A stretch of DNA of 64,000 bases from Macrostomum lignano. Its lineage: Eukaryota. The translations under genes and the position numbers were made by a program. How positions within the stretch are numbered: position 1 is the stretch's first letter; each line of letters opens with the position of its first letter. The notes beneath the pieces were generated by a model. The model had not been told where the DNA came from. It saw nothing but the letters and a program-made list of their open reading frames with translations, and searched no databases. The stretch is taken from positions 186,001 to 250,000 of the forward strand of contig NIVC01000359.1 of NCBI GenBank assembly GCA_002269645.1, in the 5' to 3' direction. Below, in pieces: positions 2,924 to 58,921 of this stretch.

Positions 2924-3519
2924 ACCCTATAGGAAAAAGTTGTAAAACCACAGACGGTGTCCGGCGCACTTTTGGAATTTTTCTAAAGCGCAGCGCGTGC
3001 ACAGGTGCAGCGCCTGTGCGCGCGCTGCCCTTTCTTACTGGCTGCTGCTTTAGCAAATACATATATATGGAAATGGATATAATACCTCTGTGGAAAGGGC
3101 TTATACACTCATAATTTATTAAGCTTAGAGATGTTCCAAAAATTCAATTTCAATTTTCCAAAATTTGAAATTTTTTTATAGCAAATTTCAATTTTGAAAA
3201 AAATTTAAAAGTGAAAATTTTGGTAGTGTCTAAAAAGTTGCTAAAAATAAACTAATTTCTACTACATATAAATGTATTACTTTTTGCTTAAGCAGTAAAT
3301 TGAAAGTGAAAAAGTGAGTGTTGATCATACTAAACTTTATTTTTCTAAATTATGATTTTGGGAAATTTCAATTTTGATTTTGGAAAGATAGCGAATTTTG
3401 ATTTCGATGAAACTGCAGATCTTTCGGAACATCTCTAATAATCCTAAAGCGTGGTAAAATAGTTTGACTCTTTTCTAAAGCGCATGTTTGCGGGTTTTAA
3501 ACATTTATTCCAATAGGGA
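2924..3519. mobile_element. Possible MITE with imperfect TIRs (CCCTAT(A/T)GGAA...), containing an inner TIR element at 3126-3437
   Basis: Outer ends ccctataggaaaaagttgtaaaacc and ggttttaaacatttattccaataggg; inner perfect 12-bp TIR TAGAGATGTTCC/GGAACATCTCTA. No clean TSDs. Confidence 0.45.
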
Positions 3520-6500
3520 TAATGAATAAATTATTTATAATAGGCCTAAAGAAAGTTATTAATCAACTTTTTCTTTGCTAGCTAGACAACTAAGGTAGAT
3601 TTATTTTCTTAAGTTTCTTAATTTACTTTTCTATATTCCATATGTCATTGCTATTAGAGTATTAATAAATAGTTATTACATATTTACTATAGGCACTTTG
3701 AATATCAACTTGCTTTATATATAGGCTTATACATATTAATTTATTATTCACTAAAACAGAAATATCTAATATATAATAAGCCTGCCACAAGAAGTTCATA
3801 GAAATAAGTAATTCAATAATAGGATATGTTATGAGAATATAATGGTACAGATACAAAAACCATTTATTATCCAATTATTCATTTCATTATTTAGTTATCA
3901 TTAGACAATTCTGTCTGTTTAAAGGTTATAGGTAACACACTTATTACCTTTGAACTAAGTTAAGATTTAACAAAATCAAATTTATATATAAGTATTATAC
4001 TGAACTAAACAAAATAAATAAAATATTTGACTATTCAACTTCACTTCAATGCAATATTATATGACTACACATGCATAAATGCACAGATAATTTTTAGAAC
4101 ATAACCACAATGAGTGATAAAGTGATAGAAAGATTTCAAGTTATTATAATTATAGGCCACTATTGAGTGTTGCTTCATGGCATTAATTATATTTATATTT
4201 TATGGACGAGTTAAAATAAATAAGATAACAAAAAGGATAAAAATATTGCGTATTAAGGCTATCTTTTTTAGTATATAATGAGAATAAATGAAGTACAAAT
4301 TAAAAGAATGCAGATGCGCATCTTCAATACAATAGATTTACAGCAGGTGCACTTTTTGTCGTCTATCGTACTGTTCTTTATAGTTCCAACTAATGTCAAA
4401 GCATACTATATTTCAAACACATGCAATTTTTTGGTGCAAGAAAAAACATATTATTTTTCATCTACAAAACACTTTTTATTCAATTATCTGCATAACTACT
4501 ATGCACTTTGCATCTACAATGTTTTAAAAACAAAAAGATTGTAAAAATTTAGTATACTATAGTACACTATTTTCAAGCCGGAAGGTGTGTCATATTTGTC
4601 ATTTTTACGTATGTGCAATCACCCGTATTTTTTGTTTGTTCCCGTCATATTTTTATGCCCTAATAACTCCTTTAATATCATACTACTAGTTTTGAAACTT
4701 CAGTAATACTTAGCGGGTGAAAAGGCGCTTCATTTTTTCAGATTAACTTGTAAAAAGGACGTTTGTCATTTTTCATGACACATAAAAAATGACATCAGTA
4801 ACAAAAAATGACTTCATGACACATCTTGTCGTCATTTTTGGAGAAATCTGTCATAAACGTGCCTATAGGGGTCGTAAAAATATGACAGGTGCGGCTATAA
4901 ATCAATCAAAATCGCAACAAAATGATTTATGGCTTTTCGCGTAGAATTGACAAAAACTAATGAAAAAATATACATTAGAAAGCTCTTATTAAGTAGAAAG
5001 TGAAGATAATGAAGAGAAATCGCTAATCGCTAATCCCAACGTACTTTGAGGGGTAAAACGCATAGTTGTCAAAGCTGTCACACGCTTGAGTAAACACGAA
5101 CAATATAATAGGCCCTGACCTAATAAATCTTGATGGCCTGTCAAAATGATGAGAAAAAAGCTACCGCCCGCATCCTCTCAGACCATCTGGCGCCAGCCCC
5201 AGCACTGAGTGAGGCGCAGGTGGCTGTCAGACCAGCTCAGACGCAATGATTTATGACCCAAAAGCAGCAAAAAACCGCGCCTATGTTATTATAACTACAA
5301 GTATGGTGGATTAATATAGCTACAGAATTGTCCTACTAGTATGAATTCTAGAAAAATTGCAAAAGAGGGAGAAAAACGCCCATAGCCTGCTGTCAGTAGG
5401 GAGCAAGTTTGGAACCCATGTGCGAGCGTGAAATTTGGAAAAAAAGTGCGTCCTCATCACAACAAATGAGTGCTACTGACAATACCGATTCTCAAAATAT
5501 TGTAGGAATTTATTTATGTAGAATTCTTGACTTCCCTCACTATAAACTCCATTGCGACACGCCCGTCACAGCCTGTGACACGGAATTAAGGAAACTCCGT
5601 GTCTCCGGAGTCCGTGTCCTCACTCGGCAGTCATGTTATACATCTCGCCCGTCTCTTTCAGATCAATTTTCCTCACTCGGTTCCCCGTTCCCCTCATTAG
5701 CACCTGTCAGTCTCCCAGGATAATTTAGTTCAGACTAGCATGTATATCAGAGAAATTAGAGCCCAAAACTGGGACGTTCGCAATTTATATACTATTCAAT
5801 TGCAGTTAGCTACATGTAAAATATGTAGCTAAACCCTCCATGAACCCGTTAGGCATGTGATTCTTAAAGCAATTATAGTAGTATGTTCATGTACGAGTAC
5901 ATGTATAGTTTAAATGATCATTCTGCGAGCTGACTCAAACTGTACATGTAGAGAACACAATTCACGGGCTTTCACATTTTTTCAATCGATCTAGGCGGCC
6001 TCTACTGTGAACTAACAAAATTAAATTAATTCTTAATTAAAACACTACAGTATATCCGATCTGATGCATGATTTCTACATGTAGTACCGTTACATGCCTC
6101 ATTTATTTCACATGTCTGGGTAATGCTATCCATGTACATGTATGCTATAAATTGTACATGTAATGCGCCCATTGCGAGTCACATCTTTATTTTAAACGTG
6201 TGATCGAATAAAACTACAGCTAAACTATTGCTGCAGTGTATACAATATAAATATGCAGATGCATACATGTATATGTACAGCAGTATAAAAGAATAGAAAG
6301 TATATATGAATCTAAACCTTACAGTAAACTTAGCTTCGCAATTAGATCAGTTGAAGAAAAAAACGAAAAAATGTGAATTGGCATTACATCGACAGCATGC
6401 CATTGCTGTCGATCCTTGATCCTGATGCAATTTTTATGCCCAAACTCTGCAAAAAATTATCCCTCAAAAAATTGAAATTATTATAGTGCTCCTTGATTAT

Positions 6501-8365: not shown

Positions 8366-10360
8366 TAGCTTAGAAAGGGCCATTGTACTAGCTAAGACAT
8401 CTGGGAGAATGCTTGCTAACTTTAGGATGCTTGCTATCAGGGGATGCTTGATATCTGTAAGATGCTTGCTATCTGTGGGATGCTTGCTATCTTAGGGAAG
8501 TTTTCTATTTAAGGGGAATGTCTGTTATCTTTGTGGAAGCTTTTATTTTATTGTCTTTTTGGTACTATTAAAGAAAAGAGATTCATAACAAACATCTTTG
8601 TCTGTGACAATTTTACTTGGATAAGGTGATTTATAAAACTGAAGAAGGAATTGATTCTTAAGAAAATGTGCTTTGGATAGATTTGCATGAAAAATTTTTA
8701 CTCCTTGCTTTTTGGGTGCCCTATAGGGGGCACTAGATTGCTAGTCTATATACTAAAAATAAATTGTCAAAACACTTTGGATTCTAGACTAAACATATAT
8801 TGATGCTATATACAATAAAGGAAAAAATTATCTTTTTTATAAAACAATATTTTTAGAGATTAAGGATGCCCTTGGCTCAAAGTGATGTCATTGGCATTGG
8901 TTAAATTTATTAATTATGTATCATAGTATTTTATTATTTATACAATATTGATATATCTTAGTAAGTAAATATGATTATTCTTCTGTATACATACTCAGAT
9001 CAATCTACTAGATGCATGTGTTATTAATCTAACAAGTCCCAGATTTTAATCAACTAAACTCACATATCCTAAGCCATGGTGAAATACTCATAGCTAAACT
9101 GTAAATCCACTCTTATACTGATACAATATATGCGCAACAGCCTTGCTTTACACCGGCCGTGCTACTTACTTTTAGACCACAAATGTGACTTTTCTGACTT
9201 ACCTATGAAAAAACCTAAGCAAAAGTTGTCGTAAGTTAAGGTAAATGGCAAGAGTAATAATGACTGTATTATTTAGGCTAAATGCCTCGTCATCTAACTA
9301 GTACATCTATTTTGGGTGGGCATTTTGCAACTTACTTTGGCTGGGCCCTTTGCCAGCCAGCCAGCCAGATTGGCCAGGTGTTGCACATGTATGATAAACT
9401 TATAATGAAAAATGAAACACTAACAGTCTGTTGTGTCTTATATTGGCAATCTTTTTCAAATTATATATAACATTGAAAATGAACTCAAACAATAAGAAGC
9501 AGAGCTAGTACATAGGCCCTATTGGCAAAAATTTGAAGATTTTAATCCAATATTACAAGCATAAGAGTGGATTTACAGTTAAGCCATTTTATCATGACTT
9601 AGGATTTGTAAGTTTAGTTGACTAATCTAAGATTTGAAAGATTATTAGATTAATTATACATGTATCTAATAGGTTAATATAAGCTAAGACATGAAATGAA
9701 ATTAATAACCAAGCTTATTCTTAATCTATTTTAAAATCTATACAATAATTTTATTTTAGTCTATAAAAAACTTAGTGTTATCTAGTAGAAATTATATAAA
9801 ACTATATAAATTATAACCAATATTATTTGCAATTTTTTATATAATTGTAATATAATATTTATAGTTAACAATCTACTTTTCCAATCAATATAAATAAAAT
9901 CAAGAAAAAATAACAATTTATATATCAAAACAAAAAGAAAACATTTAGGAATAATTTTTTAAAACCAAATAAAAAAGAACTTTGCGCCAAAAAGGATTTT
10001 GCTAATATTTTATTATTAAAAAACCCATAATATATAAAAAAACCTTTAACCATCTTTATATTCCATTAAAACTTTTTTACTTAACTCAAGAGTATTTATT
10101 TAATTAAATTCAATTTACTCATATAGACTTAAGATATTATTAAGATACTTTAATTTTTTTGTAAAAATTACTTTTTTAATTGAAAAAAATTGCATATTTG
10201 AATTTTATTCAATAAATAAAATTTGTAGCCCTAGATAGAACATAGAAGAAAACAAATAAAGAAACAGCCTATTCTTGCACAAACTATTTTTCTCTCAAAT
10301 AATTCATATCTAATTTGATAATTGCTTTTTTCAGTTCTAGTGGCACATTCTAGACTCAAT

Positions 10361-49021: not shown

Positions 49022-52000
49022 CTAGAATCCGCTCTGGTCGTCTTCTGAGTCCCATTCGCAGTGCTCGACTGTGCCCGCATCGGCGCTGAAGTCCACCTCC
49101 TTGTCGTAGATGTAGCCAGGGTCACCCGGTTTCAACTGGTGCTTCTCGAATTGTTCCTGCAAAATTGCCCAGGAAGGCAAGGCACAGATATTGGACCAAT
49201 ACGATAAGAGGAGGGCGTGTGCTCAGCTGTACTTGACTTTAGAATGGCACAGAGGTGCTTAATTGGAAAAGGCCCAGCCTTTAATTATTCCAATAGCTGA
49301 ATCAACACGATAGGAAAACATAACTAATCCAAATTCAAAGGATTGAAATGAAATTATTAAATATGCCTATTTTAAAGTGCAAGTGATGGGAAGAAACCGC
49401 AAAACATCCCAATGATAGGATGGGAAAACTGCAAAATATTCCAATGATGGGATGGGAAGAAGCCGCAAATATCCCAATGACGATGGGAAGAAAGCGCAAA
49501 ATATCCAAATGATGATGGGAAGAAACCGACAAAAAAACCCAATTATGAAGACCCAGTTGCCGCACCTGCATGGCAGCCTTCTTCCTCTGCAGTGTCTCCT
49601 CGTCAACTTTGTTAAGATCCTCTAGCGGATCGATTTGCTCCATCTGGCGCTGTTTATCCAGACTCTGCTCTTTGCTGAGGCCGTTCACTGTCACATCGCG
49701 CAGGATGGACAGCAGGCGTTCGAGCTGCAGCTGGCTGAGCTGACAGATGAGATCGCCGTGTCGCTTGTCCTACAGAGACAATTTAGATTTGTTAATTGTA
49801 ACCAAATATTGTTTGCTGACTTTTTAAAAGATTGCATGAAAAGTTAGTATATTCTTTGATAATTAAGTTCGCCTGCTAATTTTAATATCGAAGTAAGCGC
49901 CAGTGTGCATTCGGTCAAGTACGTCGTTAAATATCTACTAAAGAGCGGCGACATGGCGACTCACGAATTAAGAAGAAACTCACGCGCAGCGTAACTGCAA
50001 AATGCGTTTCCTTTTTTTCAAATATGATTGTACTGGAACAATTTTGTGTGAAACAAAAAACGTTTGTTCCTATTTTTTCGTTCATTTGTGCTAAGCAATT
50101 TTTTATTTTGCTTTTTTCACCTTAAAAAAGCCTATAGTTTTTTTGAAAGACTATTCGTTTGCAACAATAAAAAACAACTAAAGCTTTAAAAAACTTACAA
50201 GTCTGTACTTAATTTTTTTTAATCTAAAGCTGAACAACAAAAAACTAAATTCTATATGCAAATGCTGCTGCTTCACGTGAAAGGTCCTACTGGCTATGAA
50301 GCATTGCTTACTACAGACGGTGTTTTTTACACATTTAAGGCTGCTTGCCAAGCCCAAGGTCTGCTTCGGCATGAAAACCACTGGCAGTTCTGCCTGAAGT
50401 AGGCCGCTCTGTCACGTATGCCGAATGTGTTGCGTCATCTTATTTGTGTCATTTGGGGTGACCTGCACGATGGTCAGAAACTTTGACGCGAGTTTGCAGA
50501 CGACTTGTGCAAGGACCTCCGTTTCCCCCAGATTTCAGCATCGAGGAGATAGAAGACCTCGCGGTTCGTGAGCTCCAAGTGCTGTCAACTTCTATGAGTG
50601 ATCGCACTTTGAGCGACTATGACCTGCCGGAAGCCTTTTCTCTGCCCCAGCTTGCGCCGCTGCAATTTAATGCAACCGAACAGGCAGAAATTGTTAATGA
50701 TCGCGCTTCATTGCTTAAATGACGTCAGAAGTGACTACGGCGGATTGCACTTCGTAGATGCTCCTGCTACTGGAAAAAACTTTATTATTGGAGGTACTAC
50801 TGGCTTTTGTTCGCAGTCGCGGTGAAGTCGCTCACGTCATAGCTTTCTCGGATATTGTTTCCACCCTGTTGCCTAGCGGGCAGACTGCGCACTCAACGCG
50901 AGTTATTTTCATTTCATTATTACGTTTACTATATTATTTTGTTATTACAAAAGAAATAAAACTGCTTCATTTTTAAGCAGCTGCATTTCTAAATTACGTC
51001 GCAATATATTTAGTTTTTGTTTTATGAAACTTGCTTTCTATTTCCATTCTTCTAAGCAAAAAAGTAATACATTCAATAAATAAATAAAAATTGTTTGCTC
51101 AGGTTCAAAGCCCGGTTTAGAGATAGATGCACACGGACACTCTGACGTCTGTTCCGTGCGAGTGCAGTCCAGGCAAGCTGCACATCTCGTCAAACCCGTT
51201 TGATTGTATGGGACGAAGTATCTACATTATCACTATCACGGACCGAAGAGACCTGGAAGCCGTTGATCAGAGTCTACGGGATATCCGAGAGCATCAATCC
51301 CTCTTCGACTTCCGCCAGGTTTTGCTGGTGGTGCAGCATAGGACACGGGCAAACAGCGTGATGGCGTGCGCTAACCCTAACCCGTCGAAAAAAACATTCC
51401 GCAAGCTGGAGGCCCGGACGCAGAACTGCGTCAGCAATACGCAAAGTTTATTCTTCTGATTGGTTTTCTTTTTTTCTCTTAAGATGATTTGCGGGAATGT
51501 GCCGTAATAGCTGGATTTCGTTTTTTTGCAGTCTTTAGGCGCCTGTCGAACAAAATTTACAAAAAGTGGTTAAATCACATTAATACTTTTTGCGACATAA
51601 CTAAACAAACTTAAAACTTAAAAAACTTTAATATCAACTATCTTTGGTAGCACCGAGTTTTCGTAATAAATTTCAGGTTGGTTCAGGTTGCACCCCTGAA
51701 GACAGTACTGGCTACATAGCCCTATCATCAGACATCATTCTACCATCAGATAACTCGACGGAACATCTTATTTGAGCCGTGTGCCAGTCTTTTAACCAGC
51801 CCTAGGAGAGGAATGCCTACTTTGCCACTCGGGCTATACTGGCTCCTTACAACTAAATTGTCAACAAAATCAACGGTGATTGTCTGGCGCTTCCAGGAGT
51901 GGCCCGGGAGTACCGGTCCGCAGACAGTTCGTCAAGCGAAAACGAAGCCACGCGCGCGGTTTCTCCCGGAAGTTTTAAACAGCCTGGAAGTGCCGAACTT

Positions 52001-55000: not shown

Positions 55001-56765
55001 GCTCAGCAACTTGCTTCCATTTTTTGTGTGCGATGCTGAGTCCGTTAAATTTGCTGAGCTTTCTGCTACCCTCAAAGGGTATCAAAGCCACCAATTGTTG
55101 CTAGCTGTTGCACTTGAAGACTTTCACCATGAGTTTGCGGTGTGGCAGAGATTCTAGATGACCAAGAACATTTCTGATTGCCCGCACAACGTTAGTGATG
55201 TATTGGACAGCTGCAAGCCAGCCTTTTATCTAGCATCTATTTGGCACTTCAGATTTTTTATACTTTGCCCGTCTCAACGGCAACAGCTGAGAGAACGTTT
55301 TCCGCAATGAAGTACCTGAAGAAATATTCAAGGGCGACGACAGGCGAGGAAAGTCTTAGTGGATTGGCATTGATGTCAATCTATAAAATCGTGGATATCG
55401 ACGTTGAAGAGACAATCAAGTTTTTCGCCTCGAAAGATAGGCGCCTTCGACTAGTGCGATTTGGATCAGTGCGCCATGGCGAAGCTGCCAATGCAGTGAT
55501 CCGCAACCGCCTCTTGCCTGGCCTCAACCAGTCTTCCTCCAGCTCCAACACAAAGCAGGTTGCGACTATCCGCGCCGTCATCGAGGCCTTAAAAGACCTG
55601 CCAACGCGCCGTGTCGATCGTCTTCGTGGACTTCCGTAAGGCGTTCGACTTGGTGCTCAGGCTTGCGATCGCGTGGTTGCTGTCCTACTACGGCGTTCCG
55701 TCTGCACTGGTAGCTGGAGTGATGGACCTGTACAATGATTCCAGAGCGTTTGTTCAAACGAGCAAGGGCCCCAGTGCCCCACTGAGGAATTCAGCACAAC
55801 CTTCGGCGTCCTGCATGGCGACACGCTGGCTCCCCTGCTCTTCATCATGGTCGTGGATTACGTACTGCGTCATTCCATTCTAGCAAGAGTCCGGACTTCA
55901 TCGTCTCCGACAGGAGGAATCAGGCCTGGCGCGCGGCGCACCTGCTCAGGAACGTCTTTATCTTACGTACAAGGGGCGGATTCTGGTGAGCCACTGCCTC
56001 CGGAGTCTCGGCCGCGGCGACCAAGTCCCGTTGGCAATGCTCCTAGCCTGTACCAGCCACGCCAAAGGCGTACTGTGACACTGAGTGACTGTTTCGTGTC
56101 TGACTTTCAGGCTCAGCCCTCAGACCGCAGCTGCTTGCCCTTCGCGTCTCTTTCGCGACGCGTGCGCGCAAGAACTCGAGTTTTTTTGCTTTTCTCTATC
56201 TATCTATCTATTCGACAAGTGACGATTGGATTTATTTTTTTATAGCGAGCTCATGATTAATGAAATGGACTGATTCAGCCCAAGATTACATCTAATGTGA
56301 GTAACAGTAACATGTGCGCCAGTGAGTAAACTTTTGCTACAAATAATTTCGGGATTAACGTGTACACTTTCGTCTATTTGTCTATTAGAGTTAAGTCTTA
56401 CTCTCGGACAAGACAAATCTCGAAACAATCGTCTACTTTTTTATAACTTGAAAGTTATTGTAGGGATTTTTCTGTTGATGGGCCTGGACAAAAAGCTATT
56501 CTAAAAACGATAACAGAGTATCAGGTTTAAATATTTCAGGCATAGTTAATGAGACTTAACTCACCTGTTTAAGTCGTTCAGCAATAGCTCCAGTAGAATT
56601 AGCGCCGGCATCGCCATTCTTTGCCTCGGCCTCAGCCGCTGACAGGTGCGCGCCTAAGCGTACCGAGCGTTTTCGCACAACGCCAAGCAGGCCACCGCGT
56701 CTGTACAACAACAGCAGAGTTGGCGGCTTGAACACCAGGCCGCACTTTAACAGCTCGTCGCCAGA
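49022..56765 (-). CDS. CEP19: Centrosomal protein CEP19 (~180 aa), 3 coding exons; no ATG found at the start of the first exon
   Basis: Exons 56765-56565, 49769-49566, 49156-49022 (all phase 0). KCGLVFKPPTLLLLY...VRKRSV; LKQDKRHG; IDPLEDLNKVDEETLQRKKAAMQEQFEKHQLKPGDPGYIYDKEVDF...EWDSE match remembered CEP19. Confidence 0.9.
49385..49545. repeat. ~29-bp degenerate minisatellite (CEP19 intron 2)
   Basis: Unit approximately atgatgggaagaaaccgcaaaatatccca. Confidence 0.8.
50250..52420 (+). pseudogene. Degenerate Helitron RepHel (Pif1-like helicase) in CEP19 intron 1
   Basis: FYMQMLLLHVKGPTGYEAL...FKAACQAQGLL; VDAPATGK; TLLPSGQTAHS; LEAVDQSLRDIR, DFRQVL; PEVLNSL...MRNFNPPRLYNGTR; IHKAQGQSL. Many stops and frameshifts. 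Confidence 0.88.
54310..55450 (+). pseudogene. Degenerate hAT transposase with a recognisable C-terminal dimerisation domain
   Basis: ALQIFYTLPVSTATAERTFSAMKYLKKYSRATTGEESLSGLALMSIYKIVDIDVEETIKFFAS at 55241-55440; the upstream part is fragmentary. Confidence 0.8.
55470..56212 (+). mobile_element. Truncated RTE-like non-LTR retrotransposon RT fragment
   Basis: SIVFVDFRKAFDLV...LLSYYGVP; GVLHGDTLAPLLFIMVVDYVLR across frameshifts; (TCTA)n tail at ~56190-56212. Confidence 0.75.
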
Positions 56766-56904
56766 CTGCAATTAGTAATCAGTTTTCGGTTCTATTGTAG
56801 ACTTTCTTAACACCCTACTTACAGTAGGAGTCATAGGATGATTAAGAATGACAAATCCCACTCTCTTAGAAGGGTAACAGCACTCACTCAAAAAATAAAT
56901 CAGA

Positions 56905-57200
56905 ATGGAAACAGCACTCCCTCGGGATGGAAACAACACTTCCTCGGGATGGAAACAGCACTGACTCAGGATGGAAACAGCACTCACTCGGGATGGAAAC
57001 AACACTTCCTCGGGATGGAAACAGCACTTCCTCGGGATGGAAACAGCACTTCCTCAGGATGGAAACAGCACTTCCTCGGGATGGAAACAGCACTTCCTCG
57101 GGATGGAAACAGCACTTCCTCGGGATGGAAACAGCACTGACTCAGGATGGAAACAGCACTCACTCAGGATGGAAACAGCACTCACTCAGGATGGAAACTG
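56905..57200. repeat. 22-bp minisatellite between the zinc-knuckle gene and CEP19
   Basis: Unit ggatggaaacagcacttcctcg, about 13 copies; degenerate copies at ~57450-57565. Confidence 0.94.
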
Positions 57201-57814
57201 TGACATGGTGACGCGGTGAACTTTGCAATAAGTTGCATGCACTGAATTGTTGACTCACTAGCAGTGGCGATAGTTATTGAATGATAGTTATGGTTTTGTA
57301 TTTAACCTCCACCCAATGTGCGCTTGTATCTGTCTGCATGCACCCACCAGCTCATTGCTAACTAATAAATATTGTCAGCCTAGCTCTCAAGCGAGCACTT
57401 TTCTCACTCCTGCAATTGAACACTACTGCCTCAGGTATTAAAGATATAACAGAAACAGCGCTCCCTCGGGGTGGAAAAAGCACTCTGAATCAAGAATCAG
57501 AATAGAAACAGCACTCCTTCAGAATGGAAGAAGCACTCACTTAGGAATCAAACTGGAAACAGCACAAAATCAGACCGAAGACGCTTAACACTGCCTAACT
57601 GGGTATACTGTATACAGTGTATAGTCAAAAAAGAAAAAGGCAGCAAAGATTTACAAAAATGCAATCGCTAGTTATGCGATCCAGTTCTTCAAAGTGCATT
57701 TTTTATTAACAAAAAACTAAAACGAACTACTCTTTAAAACTGCTCGAAACTTCTAATTGATTTTGAACTTCATCGAATTAATTTTGAAACCTCAAGGATA
57801 CAAACGCGGCAGCA

Positions 57815-58243
57815 TCAGCCCGGACAGTTGGCGGCCAAGTGACCCTCTTGGCCGCAGATGCGACATTTCACAGGCGACGGACAATTCTTAGCCAAGTGGC
57901 CCTCCTGGCCGCAGTTGTGACACCGCGGCAGCGACTTGCAGTCTCTGGACAGGTGGCCCTCCTGTCCGCAGTTGTGGCATATAACGCCAGACGGACAATC
58001 CTTGGCCAGGTGGCCGGGCTTGCGGCAGTTGTAGCAGATCAAAGGCCGCTGCTGATCAAACGGCTGTGTGTGCAAGCAACGCGTCACGCCTGTTGCTCCA
58101 GCTGTTGCTGGCATAGAAAAGACTGGTCGCAATGACTTCATTGCAGATTGGCTGCCAGCGTTAACGACAGACAGCCATCTTTGGCTGCTAAGCAGGAGGC
58201 AGCGGGTTGTAGTAGCAGTCTTAACAGAGCAAGCAAAAGACAT
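57815..58243 (-). CDS. CNBP-like protein with four CCHC zinc knuckles and a presequence-like N-terminus (142 aa)
   Basis: Four C-x2-C-x4-H-x4-C knuckles (CYNCRKPGHLAKDC, CHNCGQEGHLSRDC, CHNCGQEGHLAKNC, CRICGQEGHLAANC); ATG 10 nt downstream of a TTGCAG acceptor-like site. Confidence 0.85.
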   Translation of the reverse strand: MSFACSVKTATTTRCLLLSSQRWLSVVNAGSQSAMKSLRPVFSMPATAGATGVTRCLHTQPFDQQRPLICYNCRKPGHLAKDCPSGVICHNCGQEGHLSRDCKSLPRCHNCGQEGHLAKNCPSPVKCRICGQEGHLAANCPG

Positions 58244-58921
58244 TGCCGCGTTGCTGCAATAGAATAATTAATAAGTTATGGTTTAACAATAGTTTAGCTG
58301 GAATTTTATAAAAACAGATAATATAACATATGCTTCATTATAATTAATTTTTTTTAACAAAAGGTGAGTGGTGACTGATTTGAGGCTGGTTAAATGTGAT
58401 CGCGTAGCATTTCAGGATCGGGATCCCACATTTTTGCTGGGATTCTGGCAGTTCAAGATTGGGATTCCAAATTTTTGCTGGGATCCTGGTATTTTGGGAT
58501 TGGGATCCCAAATTTTTGCTAGGTGAGATCCTAGTATTTTGGGATTGGGTTCCTATCCTACTAAATAGTGAGGTGTGCTAAAGTCACATTTCTTAGTATA
58601 ACATCAATACTTACACAATGATGGTAATTTACTTTTTATAGATTAATGATAATAATACTCATAAAGTAAACTTTATTTATATTATTAAAGTTATATTAAT
58701 TGCTTTTCTTCTATTTATTTACAGATAATAATAATAAGCTTAGGCCTTGTAATTATCTAATTTGATACAAAAATTAGAGGGTAATTCTAACTTGTCCTAT
58801 TACTTATTATTTTATTTTTGTATTGGCCTACCGCTACCTAGGGGCCAAATATTTTTTTGCTCATAATCACATTGATCCTAATCAATGCAACAAAAATGAA
58901 AATAAAACAACTACCAATTAT

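What the first reader, a model, noticed from the sequence alone, without database searches (positions are those of the whole stretch)
56565..56775. CEP19 has no start codon of its own: candidate use of a spliced-leader AUG
Seen: the first coding exon begins right after a TAATTGCAG acceptor in phase 0 (TCT GGC GAC GAG CTG TTA AAG TGC GGC), only 6 residues before the conserved KCG motif. I found no in-frame ATG at this start and no obvious ATG-donor exon between it and the next upstream gene. Established: flatworm spliced leaders end in AUG, which can serve as the initiator Met of recipient mRNAs. Inference: SL trans-splicing yields MSGDELLKCG..., close to the length of the vertebrate N-terminus (MMCTAKKCG).
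Basis: partly seen in the sequence, partly recalled or inferred. Interest (0 to 1): 0.72.

Follow-up and report, generated by a model that had tools for sequence, protein, structure and literature searches.

The report
CEP19 start codon from spliced leader
In the flatworm Macrostomum lignano the cilium gene CEP19 has no start codon in the genome and almost certainly takes it from the AUG that ends the spliced leader; this mechanism is already known in flatworms, so the case is correct but ordinary.

Summary
The window is Macrostomum lignano, assembly Mlig_3_7, scaffold NIVC01000359.1. On the minus strand a three-exon CEP19 gene (Pfam PF14933, E=1.8e-36) begins at 56765, directly after TAATTGCAG. 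An in-frame TAA lies inside that acceptor, and the first in-frame ATG is at residue 110. The published M. lignano spliced leader (SL) ends in ...TTGCATG, and its trans-splice acceptor motif [T/C]TNCAG fits.

I could not see reads, but two indirect lines place SL-joined transcripts at this acceptor:
- **Annotation.** The GenBank CDS (PAA84840.1, "partial") starts at the first base after the AG. It was built from transcripts cut at SL-read peaks.
- **Assembly footprint.** In the duplicate scaffold, the AG acceptors of both CEP19 and the upstream CNBP-like gene are overwritten by the SL's last bases (CATG, GCATG). That assembly was polished with RNA-seq reads.

The SL AUG is in frame and gives MSGDELLKCG..., a normal N-terminal length for CEP19.

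Such an exon turns up by chance in 39% of shuffles.

Trematode orthologues carry their own genomic ATG. SL-donated start codons have been known in flatworms since 2006, so this is a new example of a known kind.

The parts
56766..56774 (-). 3' splice (trans-splice) acceptor TAATTGCAG. TTGCAG fits the M. lignano trans-splice motif [T/C]TNCAG. Its first three bases (56774..56772) are an in-frame TAA stop.
   Evidence: Sequence; motif from PMC8629364; overwritten to TAATTCATG in the duplicate scaffold L002
56565..56765 (-). CEP19 coding exon 1, phase 0 at both ends, 67 codons (SGDELLKCG...AERLKQ), with no ATG in frame
   Evidence: Pfam PF14933; identical to the start of PAA84840.1
56559..56564 (-). 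Donor GTGAGT of CEP19 intron 1. The intron is about 6.8 kb and holds a reverse-transcriptase fragment.
49566..49769 (-). CEP19 coding exon 2, 68 codons (DKRHGD...KKAAMQ)
   Evidence: the joined product equals P0002
49022..49156 (-). CEP19 coding exon 3, 44 codons plus TAG stop (49024..49022)
   Evidence: gene range L001:10001-17744
56817..56834 (-). Rival start: in-frame micro-exon ATGACTCCTACT (56834..56823) plus donor GTAAGT (56822..56817), 57 nt upstream of the acceptor
   Evidence: only consensus-donor candidate; 39% of shuffles give one; absent from the public gene model
56775..57814 (-). Outron / intercistronic region between the CNBP-like stop codon and the CEP19 acceptor. It holds a 22-nt tandem repeat at 56905-57198 (13.4 copies), degenerate copies at 57451-57565, and a candidate AATAAA at 57707..57702.
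57815..58252 (-). Upstream gene on the same strand: a CNBP-like protein with four CCHC zinc knuckles. The annotated CDS is 5'-partial (NAAMSF...); the real ATG is at 58243..58241.
   Evidence: Pfam PF00098; (BOX15_Mlig002438g7 in the duplicate, same transcriptional-unit prefix as CEP19 g8)
58254..58262 (-). Acceptor CTATTGCAG of the CNBP-like gene; the transcript starts at 58253. It is overwritten to CTATGCATG in the duplicate scaffold.

Best explanation
CEP19 is the downstream gene of a two-gene transcriptional unit (CNBP-like zinc-knuckle gene, then CEP19) on the minus strand of M. lignano scaffold NIVC01000359.1. The 35-nt spliced leader is trans-spliced onto the TTGCAG acceptor at 56766. 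The mature mRNA therefore begins ...CAATTTATTGCAUG|UCUGGCGACGAG.... The leader's terminal AUG, the only AUG in the leader, is in frame with exon 1. It serves as the initiator and gives a 180-residue protein, MSGDELLKCG...DDQSGF.

Shown: the gene structure, the absence of a genomic in-frame ATG, the in-frame stop just upstream, the fit of the acceptor motif, and the frame.

Shown indirectly: SL-bearing transcripts are joined at exactly this acceptor.

Inferred: ribosomes start at the SL AUG, and the two genes are co-transcribed.
For: 1. The window is 100% identical to Mlig_3_7 scaffold NIVC01000359.1.
2. The CEP19 product is identical to PAA84840.1, 'BOX15_Mlig002438g13, partial'.
3. That annotation comes from transcripts cut at SL-read peaks (TBONE), with ORFs called by TransDecoder (PMC5730564). 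A 5'-partial CDS that starts at the first base after the AG, with a genomic in-frame TAA 9 nt upstream, means the transcript model begins at the acceptor.
4. The neighbouring CNBP-like CDS likewise starts at the first full codon after its own TTGCAG acceptor.
5. In the duplicate scaffold NIVC01003025.1, TAATTGCAG|TCTGGC reads TAATTCATG|TCTGGC and CTATTGCAG|CAACGC reads CTATGCATG|CAACGC. These are the last 4 and 5 bases of the SL.
6. These are the only clean clusters of 3 or more substitutions in about 15.8 kb of alignment that differs by only about 1-2.6% overall. The assembly was polished with Pilon using STAR-mapped RNA-seq.
7. The SL sequence and the acceptor motif [T/C]TNCAG are published (PMC8629364).
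8. The first in-frame Met is residue 110. A separate set of database entries for this gene (UniProt) is truncated to 70 aa starting there.
9. The Pfam domain starts at residue 7. In orthologues the Met lies 4-22 residues before the K/R-C-G motif, with a mode of 8. The SL-AUG model gives 7.
10. Precedent: in S. mansoni the SL AUG is in frame in 28% of trans-spliced transcripts and more than 40 cDNAs need it (Cheng et al. 2006, as cited in PMC9851317, and PMC12582326). The Macrostomum SL ATG is described as a likely translation start codon in PMC10468722.
11. CEP19 and the CNBP-like gene carry the same transcriptional-unit prefix with consecutive numbers, Mlig002438 g7 and g8.
Against: - I saw no SL-containing read, cDNA or transcript contig. 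The protein collection holds no transcript-derived MSGDE... protein.
- The read-level evidence is second-hand: the annotation start and the polishing footprint.
- The footprint is in the duplicate copy, not in the window's own copy, which keeps the AG.
- Translation from the SL AUG is untested in M. lignano. Its context (UGC AUG U, 32-nt leader) is fixed by the SL and does not match the vertebrate Kozak rule.
- A consensus GTAAGT donor with an in-frame ATG lies 57 nt upstream in the outron and could compete by cis-splicing.
Confidence: 0.85

Rival explanations
1. A cis-spliced micro-exon supplies the start. Transcription begins upstream of 56834, and ATGACTCCTACT (56834..56823) is joined through its GTAAGT donor and a 57-nt intron to the same acceptor, giving MTPTSGDELLKCG...
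For: It is in frame and has a consensus donor of the GT[G/A]AG type (motif). It is identical in both genomic copies. The resulting N-terminus, 10 residues before KCG, is within the orthologue range.
Against: - 39% of shuffled intergenic sequences contain such an exon.
- Its conservation tells us nothing, because the whole region is nearly identical in the two copies.
- The RNA-seq-based annotation calls a 5'-partial CDS starting at S1. TransDecoder would have called the complete MTPT... ORF if the micro-exon were in the transcript model.
- The SL footprint at this acceptor shows that SL junction reads exist.
- It cannot be excluded as a minor isoform.
Confidence: 0.06
2. Translation starts at the first genomic in-frame AUG (Met110, MEQIDPLED...) and gives a 70-residue C-terminal fragment, as in the UniProt entries. 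The upstream reading frame would be untranslated.
For: UniProt entries A0A1I8GZT5 and A0A1I8GU14 are modelled this way. This model needs no spliced-leader AUG.
Against: - Residues 7-109 match the CEP19 Pfam profile from position 2 onward.
- They align with orthologues, including the KCG...PP..L..Y motif.
- An open, conserved 109-codon frame running from exactly the acceptor is not expected for a 5' UTR.
Confidence: 0.03
3. The ATG directly before TCT in the duplicate scaffold (TAATTCATG|TCTGGC) is real sequence. One copy would then have its own genomic start, and the window copy would be either a variant that relies on the SL or a non-functional copy.
For: The duplicate scaffold reads CATG at this position.
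Against: - The same kind of change, to GCATG, occurs at the CNBP-like acceptor. There the ATG is out of frame and useless.
- Both changes reproduce the SL terminus and destroy a canonical AG.
- RNA-seq polishing is documented for this assembly.
- Even if the bases were real, they would have to derive from SL-joined transcripts.
Confidence: 0.03

Closest known systems
Schistosoma mansoni mRNAs that need the spliced leader's 3'-terminal AUG as initiator (Cheng, Cohen, Ndegwa & Davis 2006, J Biol Chem 281:733; cited in PMC9851317 and PMC12582326)
   Same: The flatworm SL ends in AUG. The acceptor lies exactly at the first sense codon of a conserved ORF. The recipient has no in-frame AUG of its own, and the SL AUG is in frame.
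   Different: The species is a free-living macrostomid with a 35-nt SL, and the gene is CEP19. Initiation at the SL AUG was tested experimentally in that work; here it is inferred. Schistosoma CEP19 itself has genomic ATGs.
slORFs: open reading frames created by SL addition (slORFfinder, PMC9851317)
   Same: The start codon is provided by the leader after trans-splicing, so genome-only gene prediction misses it.
   Different: slORFs were called from ribosome footprints in nematodes, trypanosomes and Oikopleura, often with non-AUG codons and often as new ORFs. Here a canonical AUG completes an ancient conserved ORF.
SL-resolved operons of M. lignano (Ustyantsev & Berezikov 2021, PMC8629364) and of nematodes
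   Same: Two genes lie on the same strand and both are trans-spliced. They share one transcriptional-unit name, and the spacer is about 1 kb, much of it repeats.
   Different: M. lignano has one SL for all positions, with no SL2-type specialisation. Co-transcription is inferred here from the annotation name and gene spacing, not observed.

Membership tests
SL-AUG-initiated trans-spliced mRNA (flatworm class of Cheng et al. 2006) | The organism has an SL RNA whose leader ends in AUG | tested here: met
   The organism is identified as M. lignano. The published SL is CGGTCTCTTACTGCGAAGACTCAATTTATTGCATG, followed by a GTAAG donor (PMC8629364). The SL RNA gene is not in the window.
SL-AUG-initiated trans-spliced mRNA (flatworm class of Cheng et al. 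2006) | A 3' splice acceptor lies directly before the first sense codon of the ORF | tested here: met
   TAATTGCAG|TCT at 56774..56766|56765, and TTGCAG fits [T/C]TNCAG.
SL-AUG-initiated trans-spliced mRNA (flatworm class of Cheng et al. 2006) | SL-bearing transcripts are joined at that acceptor | tested here: met
   The evidence is indirect. The annotated 5'-partial CDS starts at the acceptor and was built from transcripts cut at SL-read peaks. SL 3' bases are written over this acceptor and over the neighbour's in the RNA-seq-polished duplicate scaffold. Reads themselves were not seen.
SL-AUG-initiated trans-spliced mRNA (flatworm class of Cheng et al. 2006) | The SL AUG is in frame, and the recipient has no in-frame AUG before the conserved domain | tested here: met
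   The exon starts in phase 0. An in-frame TAA lies 9 nt upstream. The first in-frame Met is residue 110, and the Pfam domain starts at residue 7.
SL-AUG-initiated trans-spliced mRNA (flatworm class of Cheng et al. 2006) | Translation actually initiates at the SL AUG | not testable with these tools
   This needs N-terminal proteomics, ribosome profiling or a reporter assay.
CEP19 (Pfam PF14933) | Match to the family profile above the curated cut-off, over its full length | tested here: met
   126.2 bits against a cut-off of 27, profile positions 2-151 of 151. There are 531 relatives at E<=0.001, and the protein aligns with named CEP19 proteins.
M. lignano operon (criteria of PMC8629364) | Same strand, downstream gene trans-spliced, repeat-adjusted intergenic distance under 1 kb | tested here: met
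   Both genes are on the minus strand. The distance from stop codon to acceptor is 1,040 nt raw, of which about 400 nt is tandem repeat. Both genes carry the prefix Mlig002438, g7 and g8. Co-transcription itself was not observed.

The most novel reading that the evidence does not exclude
The CATG and GCATG at the two acceptors of the duplicate scaffold are real genomic sequence, not polishing artefacts. In that case SL-joined cDNA would have been copied back into the genome by short-tract gene conversion, fixing an SL-derived ATG as CEP19's genomic start codon in one copy.
Probability: 0.03. Interest if true: 0.7.

Novelty: new member of a known kind. Interest (0 to 1): 0.25.

Why it matters
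The mechanism has been known in flatworms since 2006, and Macrostomum workers already note that their SL ends in a likely start codon. No new biology is claimed. The value is practical.

1. The GenBank 'partial' CEP19 models (PAA84840.1, PAA53774.1) can be completed as MSGDELL.... The 70-residue UniProt models are truncated.
2. Genome-only gene prediction in SL-using flatworms will mis-model genes of this kind.
3. Mlig_3_7 carries SL-derived bases written over real AG acceptors in at least one scaffold. These create false genomic ATGs and destroy splice sites, which users of that assembly should know.
4. Trematode CEP19 keeps its own ATG, so reliance on the SL AUG is not shared across flatworms. 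It may be specific to the Macrostomum lineage.

Tried and rejected
- **Transcript-derived proteins starting MSGDE....** None found. The 90% cluster has only two GenBank partial models and two 70-aa UniProt models, so no transcript contig could be fetched.
- **Supplements of PMC5730564 and PMC8629364, searched for Mlig002438 or CEP19.** Nothing held.
- **SL RNA gene or SL-like sequence in the window.** None. There were no Rfam matches in the whole window.
- **SL-terminal heptamer TTGCATG in the window.** Not enriched: 9 matches against 16.8 expected. The window copy shows no polishing footprints.
- **N-terminal length as a way to choose between the SL AUG (7 residues before KCG) and the micro-exon (10).** Both fall inside the orthologue range of 4-22, so it does not discriminate.
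- **Conservation of the micro-exon between the two genomic copies.** Uninformative, because the whole region is nearly identical.
- **Bacterial promoter and terminator scan.** Not applicable to this eukaryotic locus.
- **Cheng et al. 2006.** The paper is not in the library, so it is cited through PMC9851317 and PMC12582326.
- **Tapeworm Dibothriocephalus latus orthologue.** Its model starts at a TTG. The conserved GCGIKCQPP motif lies upstream in frame, with no in-frame ATG and no AG between the stop codon and the motif. This is a draft assembly and I left it unresolved.
- **Other Macrostomum species or planarian CEP19.** None were returned by the profile search.

Full report
**What is in the sequence**

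The feature lies on the minus strand. It reads ...GATTACTAATTGCAG|TCTGGCGACGAGCTGTTAAAGTGCGGC.... The acceptor TAATTGCAG is at 56774..56766. The exon runs from 56765 to 56565 and ends at a GTGAGT donor. It translates in phase 0 to SGDELLKCGLVFKPPTLLLLYRRGG...AERLKQ.

Two further exons (49769..49566 and 49156..49022, stop TAG) complete a 179-residue product. That product matches Pfam PF14933 (CEP19) at 126 bits, E=1.8e-36, over profile positions 2-151 of 151, starting at residue 7.

Exon 1 has no in-frame ATG. An in-frame TAA lies inside the acceptor nonamer, three codons upstream of the first codon. The first in-frame Met is residue 110.

**Where the window comes from**

The product is identical to GenBank PAA84840.1, 'hypothetical protein BOX15_Mlig002438g13, partial [Macrostomum lignano]'. 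A 99%-identical duplicate is PAA53774.1 (g8). Two UniProt entries for the same gene are only 70 residues long and start at Met110.

The window is 100% identical to Mlig_3_7 scaffold NIVC01000359.1 over the 25 kb fetched as L001. The duplicate, L002 (NIVC01003025.1), is about 97.4-98.6% identical.

So two sets of database entries for this gene failed to find a genomic start codon. One leaves the CDS 5'-partial. The other truncates it.

**Is the acceptor a trans-splice site?**

M. lignano has one spliced leader, CGGTCTCTTACTGCGAAGACTCAATTTATTGCATG. The motif enriched at its acceptors is [T/C]TNCAG (PMC8629364), and the CEP19 acceptor is TTGCAG. I could not reach RNA-seq reads, but two indirect lines point to SL junctions at exactly this base.

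*First line: the annotation.* The Mlig_3_7 annotation was built by cutting RNA-seq-assembled transcriptional units at peaks of trimmed SL-containing reads (TBONE). ORFs were then called with TransDecoder (PMC5730564).
- A 5'-partial ORF is reported only when the frame stays open to the 5' end of the transcript.
- The genome has an in-frame TAA 9 nt upstream, and the CDS starts at the first base after the AG.
- So the transcript model must begin at the acceptor.
- The upstream neighbour behaves the same way. Its annotated CDS (NAAMSF...) begins at the first full codon after its own CTATTGCAG acceptor, three codons before its real ATG.

*Second line: a footprint in the duplicate scaffold.* Both acceptors are overwritten there by the end of the SL.
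- TAATTGCAG|TCTGGC has become TAATTCATG|TCTGGC.
- CTATTGCAG|CAACGC has become CTATGCATG|CAACGC.
- These are the only clean runs of three or more substitutions in about 15.8 kb of alignment.
- Both runs reproduce the SL's last 4-5 bases, and both destroy a canonical AG.
- The paper states that the assembly was polished with Pilon using Illumina DNA reads and STAR-mapped RNA-seq.
- Reads carrying a few SL bases and aligned end to end explain the pattern exactly. The pattern therefore records reads that read ...CATG|TCTGGC....
- At the CNBP-like gene the written-in ATG is out of frame, which argues against a selected, real variant.

**Reading frame and product**

With the SL attached, the mRNA reads ...UUGCAUG|UCUGGC.... 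The AUG is the only one in the leader and is in frame, giving MSGDELLKCG... (180 residues).

In 70 orthologue N-termini the Met lies 4-22 residues before the K/R-C-G motif, with a mode of 8. The SL model gives 7.

Between the upstream gene and the acceptor there are six in-frame ATG-to-GT candidates, and only one has a consensus donor. That one is ATG ACT CCT ACT | GTAAGT at 56834..56817, with a 57-nt intron, giving MTPTSGDELL....
- It is identical in both copies, but so is everything around it.
- 39% of shuffled intergenic sequences contain such an exon.
- The RNA-seq-based annotation does not use it.
- I cannot exclude it as a minor isoform.

**Context**

The upstream gene (58252..57815, minus strand) encodes a CNBP-like protein with four CCHC zinc knuckles. 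In the duplicate scaffold it is BOX15_Mlig002438g7, next to CEP19 g8, with the same transcriptional-unit prefix.

The spacer is 1,040 nt, of which about 400 nt is a 22-nt tandem repeat and its degenerate copies. By the published criteria (both genes trans-spliced, repeat-adjusted distance under 1 kb) the two genes form an operon with CEP19 downstream. Co-transcription is inferred, not seen.

**Orthologues**

Trematode CEP19 proteins (Schistosoma, Clonorchis, Opisthorchis, Dicrocoelium, Calicophoron, Trichobilharzia) all start with a Met 4-10 residues before RCG/KCG. The ATGs are present in the S. mansoni and C. sinensis genomes.

The ATG-less start is therefore not a general flatworm feature. 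The tapeworm D. latus model is unclear. No other Macrostomum or planarian sequence was available.

**Comparison with what is known**

- All reported flatworm SLs end in AUG.
[quoted passage not shown] 2006, as reported in PMC9851317, and PMC12582326).
- The Macrostomum genome paper notes that the SL's final ATG is a likely translation start codon and left it untrimmed for that reason (PMC10468722).

This case meets every sequence-level criterion of that class. Only initiation itself is untested. It is a new member of a known kind.

**Verdict**

Interest is low (0.25). The useful by-products are corrected gene models and the evidence that Mlig_3_7 has SL-derived bases written over true acceptors.

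Noticed in passing
L002 (NIVC01003025.1) 8489-8493 and 9997-9999; window equivalents 58258..58255 and 56769..56767: In the duplicate Mlig_3_7 scaffold the AG acceptors of the CNBP-like gene and of CEP19 are replaced by the last 4-5 bases of the spliced leader (GCATG, CATG). This most likely comes from polishing the assembly with RNA-seq reads. It creates false genomic ATGs and removes splice sites.
   Followed up: yes
window 58262..58211 (minus strand): The CNBP-like gene is also trans-spliced at a TTGCAG acceptor. There the SL AUG is out of frame with the real ATG (58243..58241) and would open an 11-codon upstream ORF (MQRGNVFCLLC*) that overlaps the true start. Translation of this gene would then need leaky scanning or reinitiation.
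   Followed up: partly
window 56905-57198, and degenerate copies at 57451-57565: A 22-nt tandem repeat (13.4 copies, 93% matches) fills the region between the two genes. On the transcribed strand several units contain GTGAGT, a donor-like motif. The duplicate scaffold has one extra unit.
   Followed up: partly
window about 55300-56000 (+ strand), inside CEP19 intron 1: A fragment of a reverse-transcriptase (LINE-like) element, with the motif VFVDFRKAFD, broken by stops and frameshifts, lies in the 6.8-kb first intron.
   Followed up: no
L003 (Dibothriocephalus latus UYRU01047005.1) 3560-3720: The tapeworm CEP19 model starts at a TTG codon. The conserved GCGIKCQPPSLL motif is encoded just upstream in the same frame, with no in-frame ATG and no AG dinucleotide between the preceding stop and the motif. 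This could be an assembly error or another unusual start.
   Followed up: partly
L005 (Clonorchis sinensis CM030369.1) 2975-3003: The genomic ATG of liver-fluke CEP19 lies 8 nt downstream of a TCTGCAG acceptor-like site. The gene may be trans-spliced there too, but with its own start codon.
   Followed up: no
window 58407-58555: A 41-nt tandem repeat (about 3 copies) with internal palindromes (GGGATCCCA) lies upstream of the CNBP-like gene. It differs markedly between the two genomic copies.
   Followed up: no
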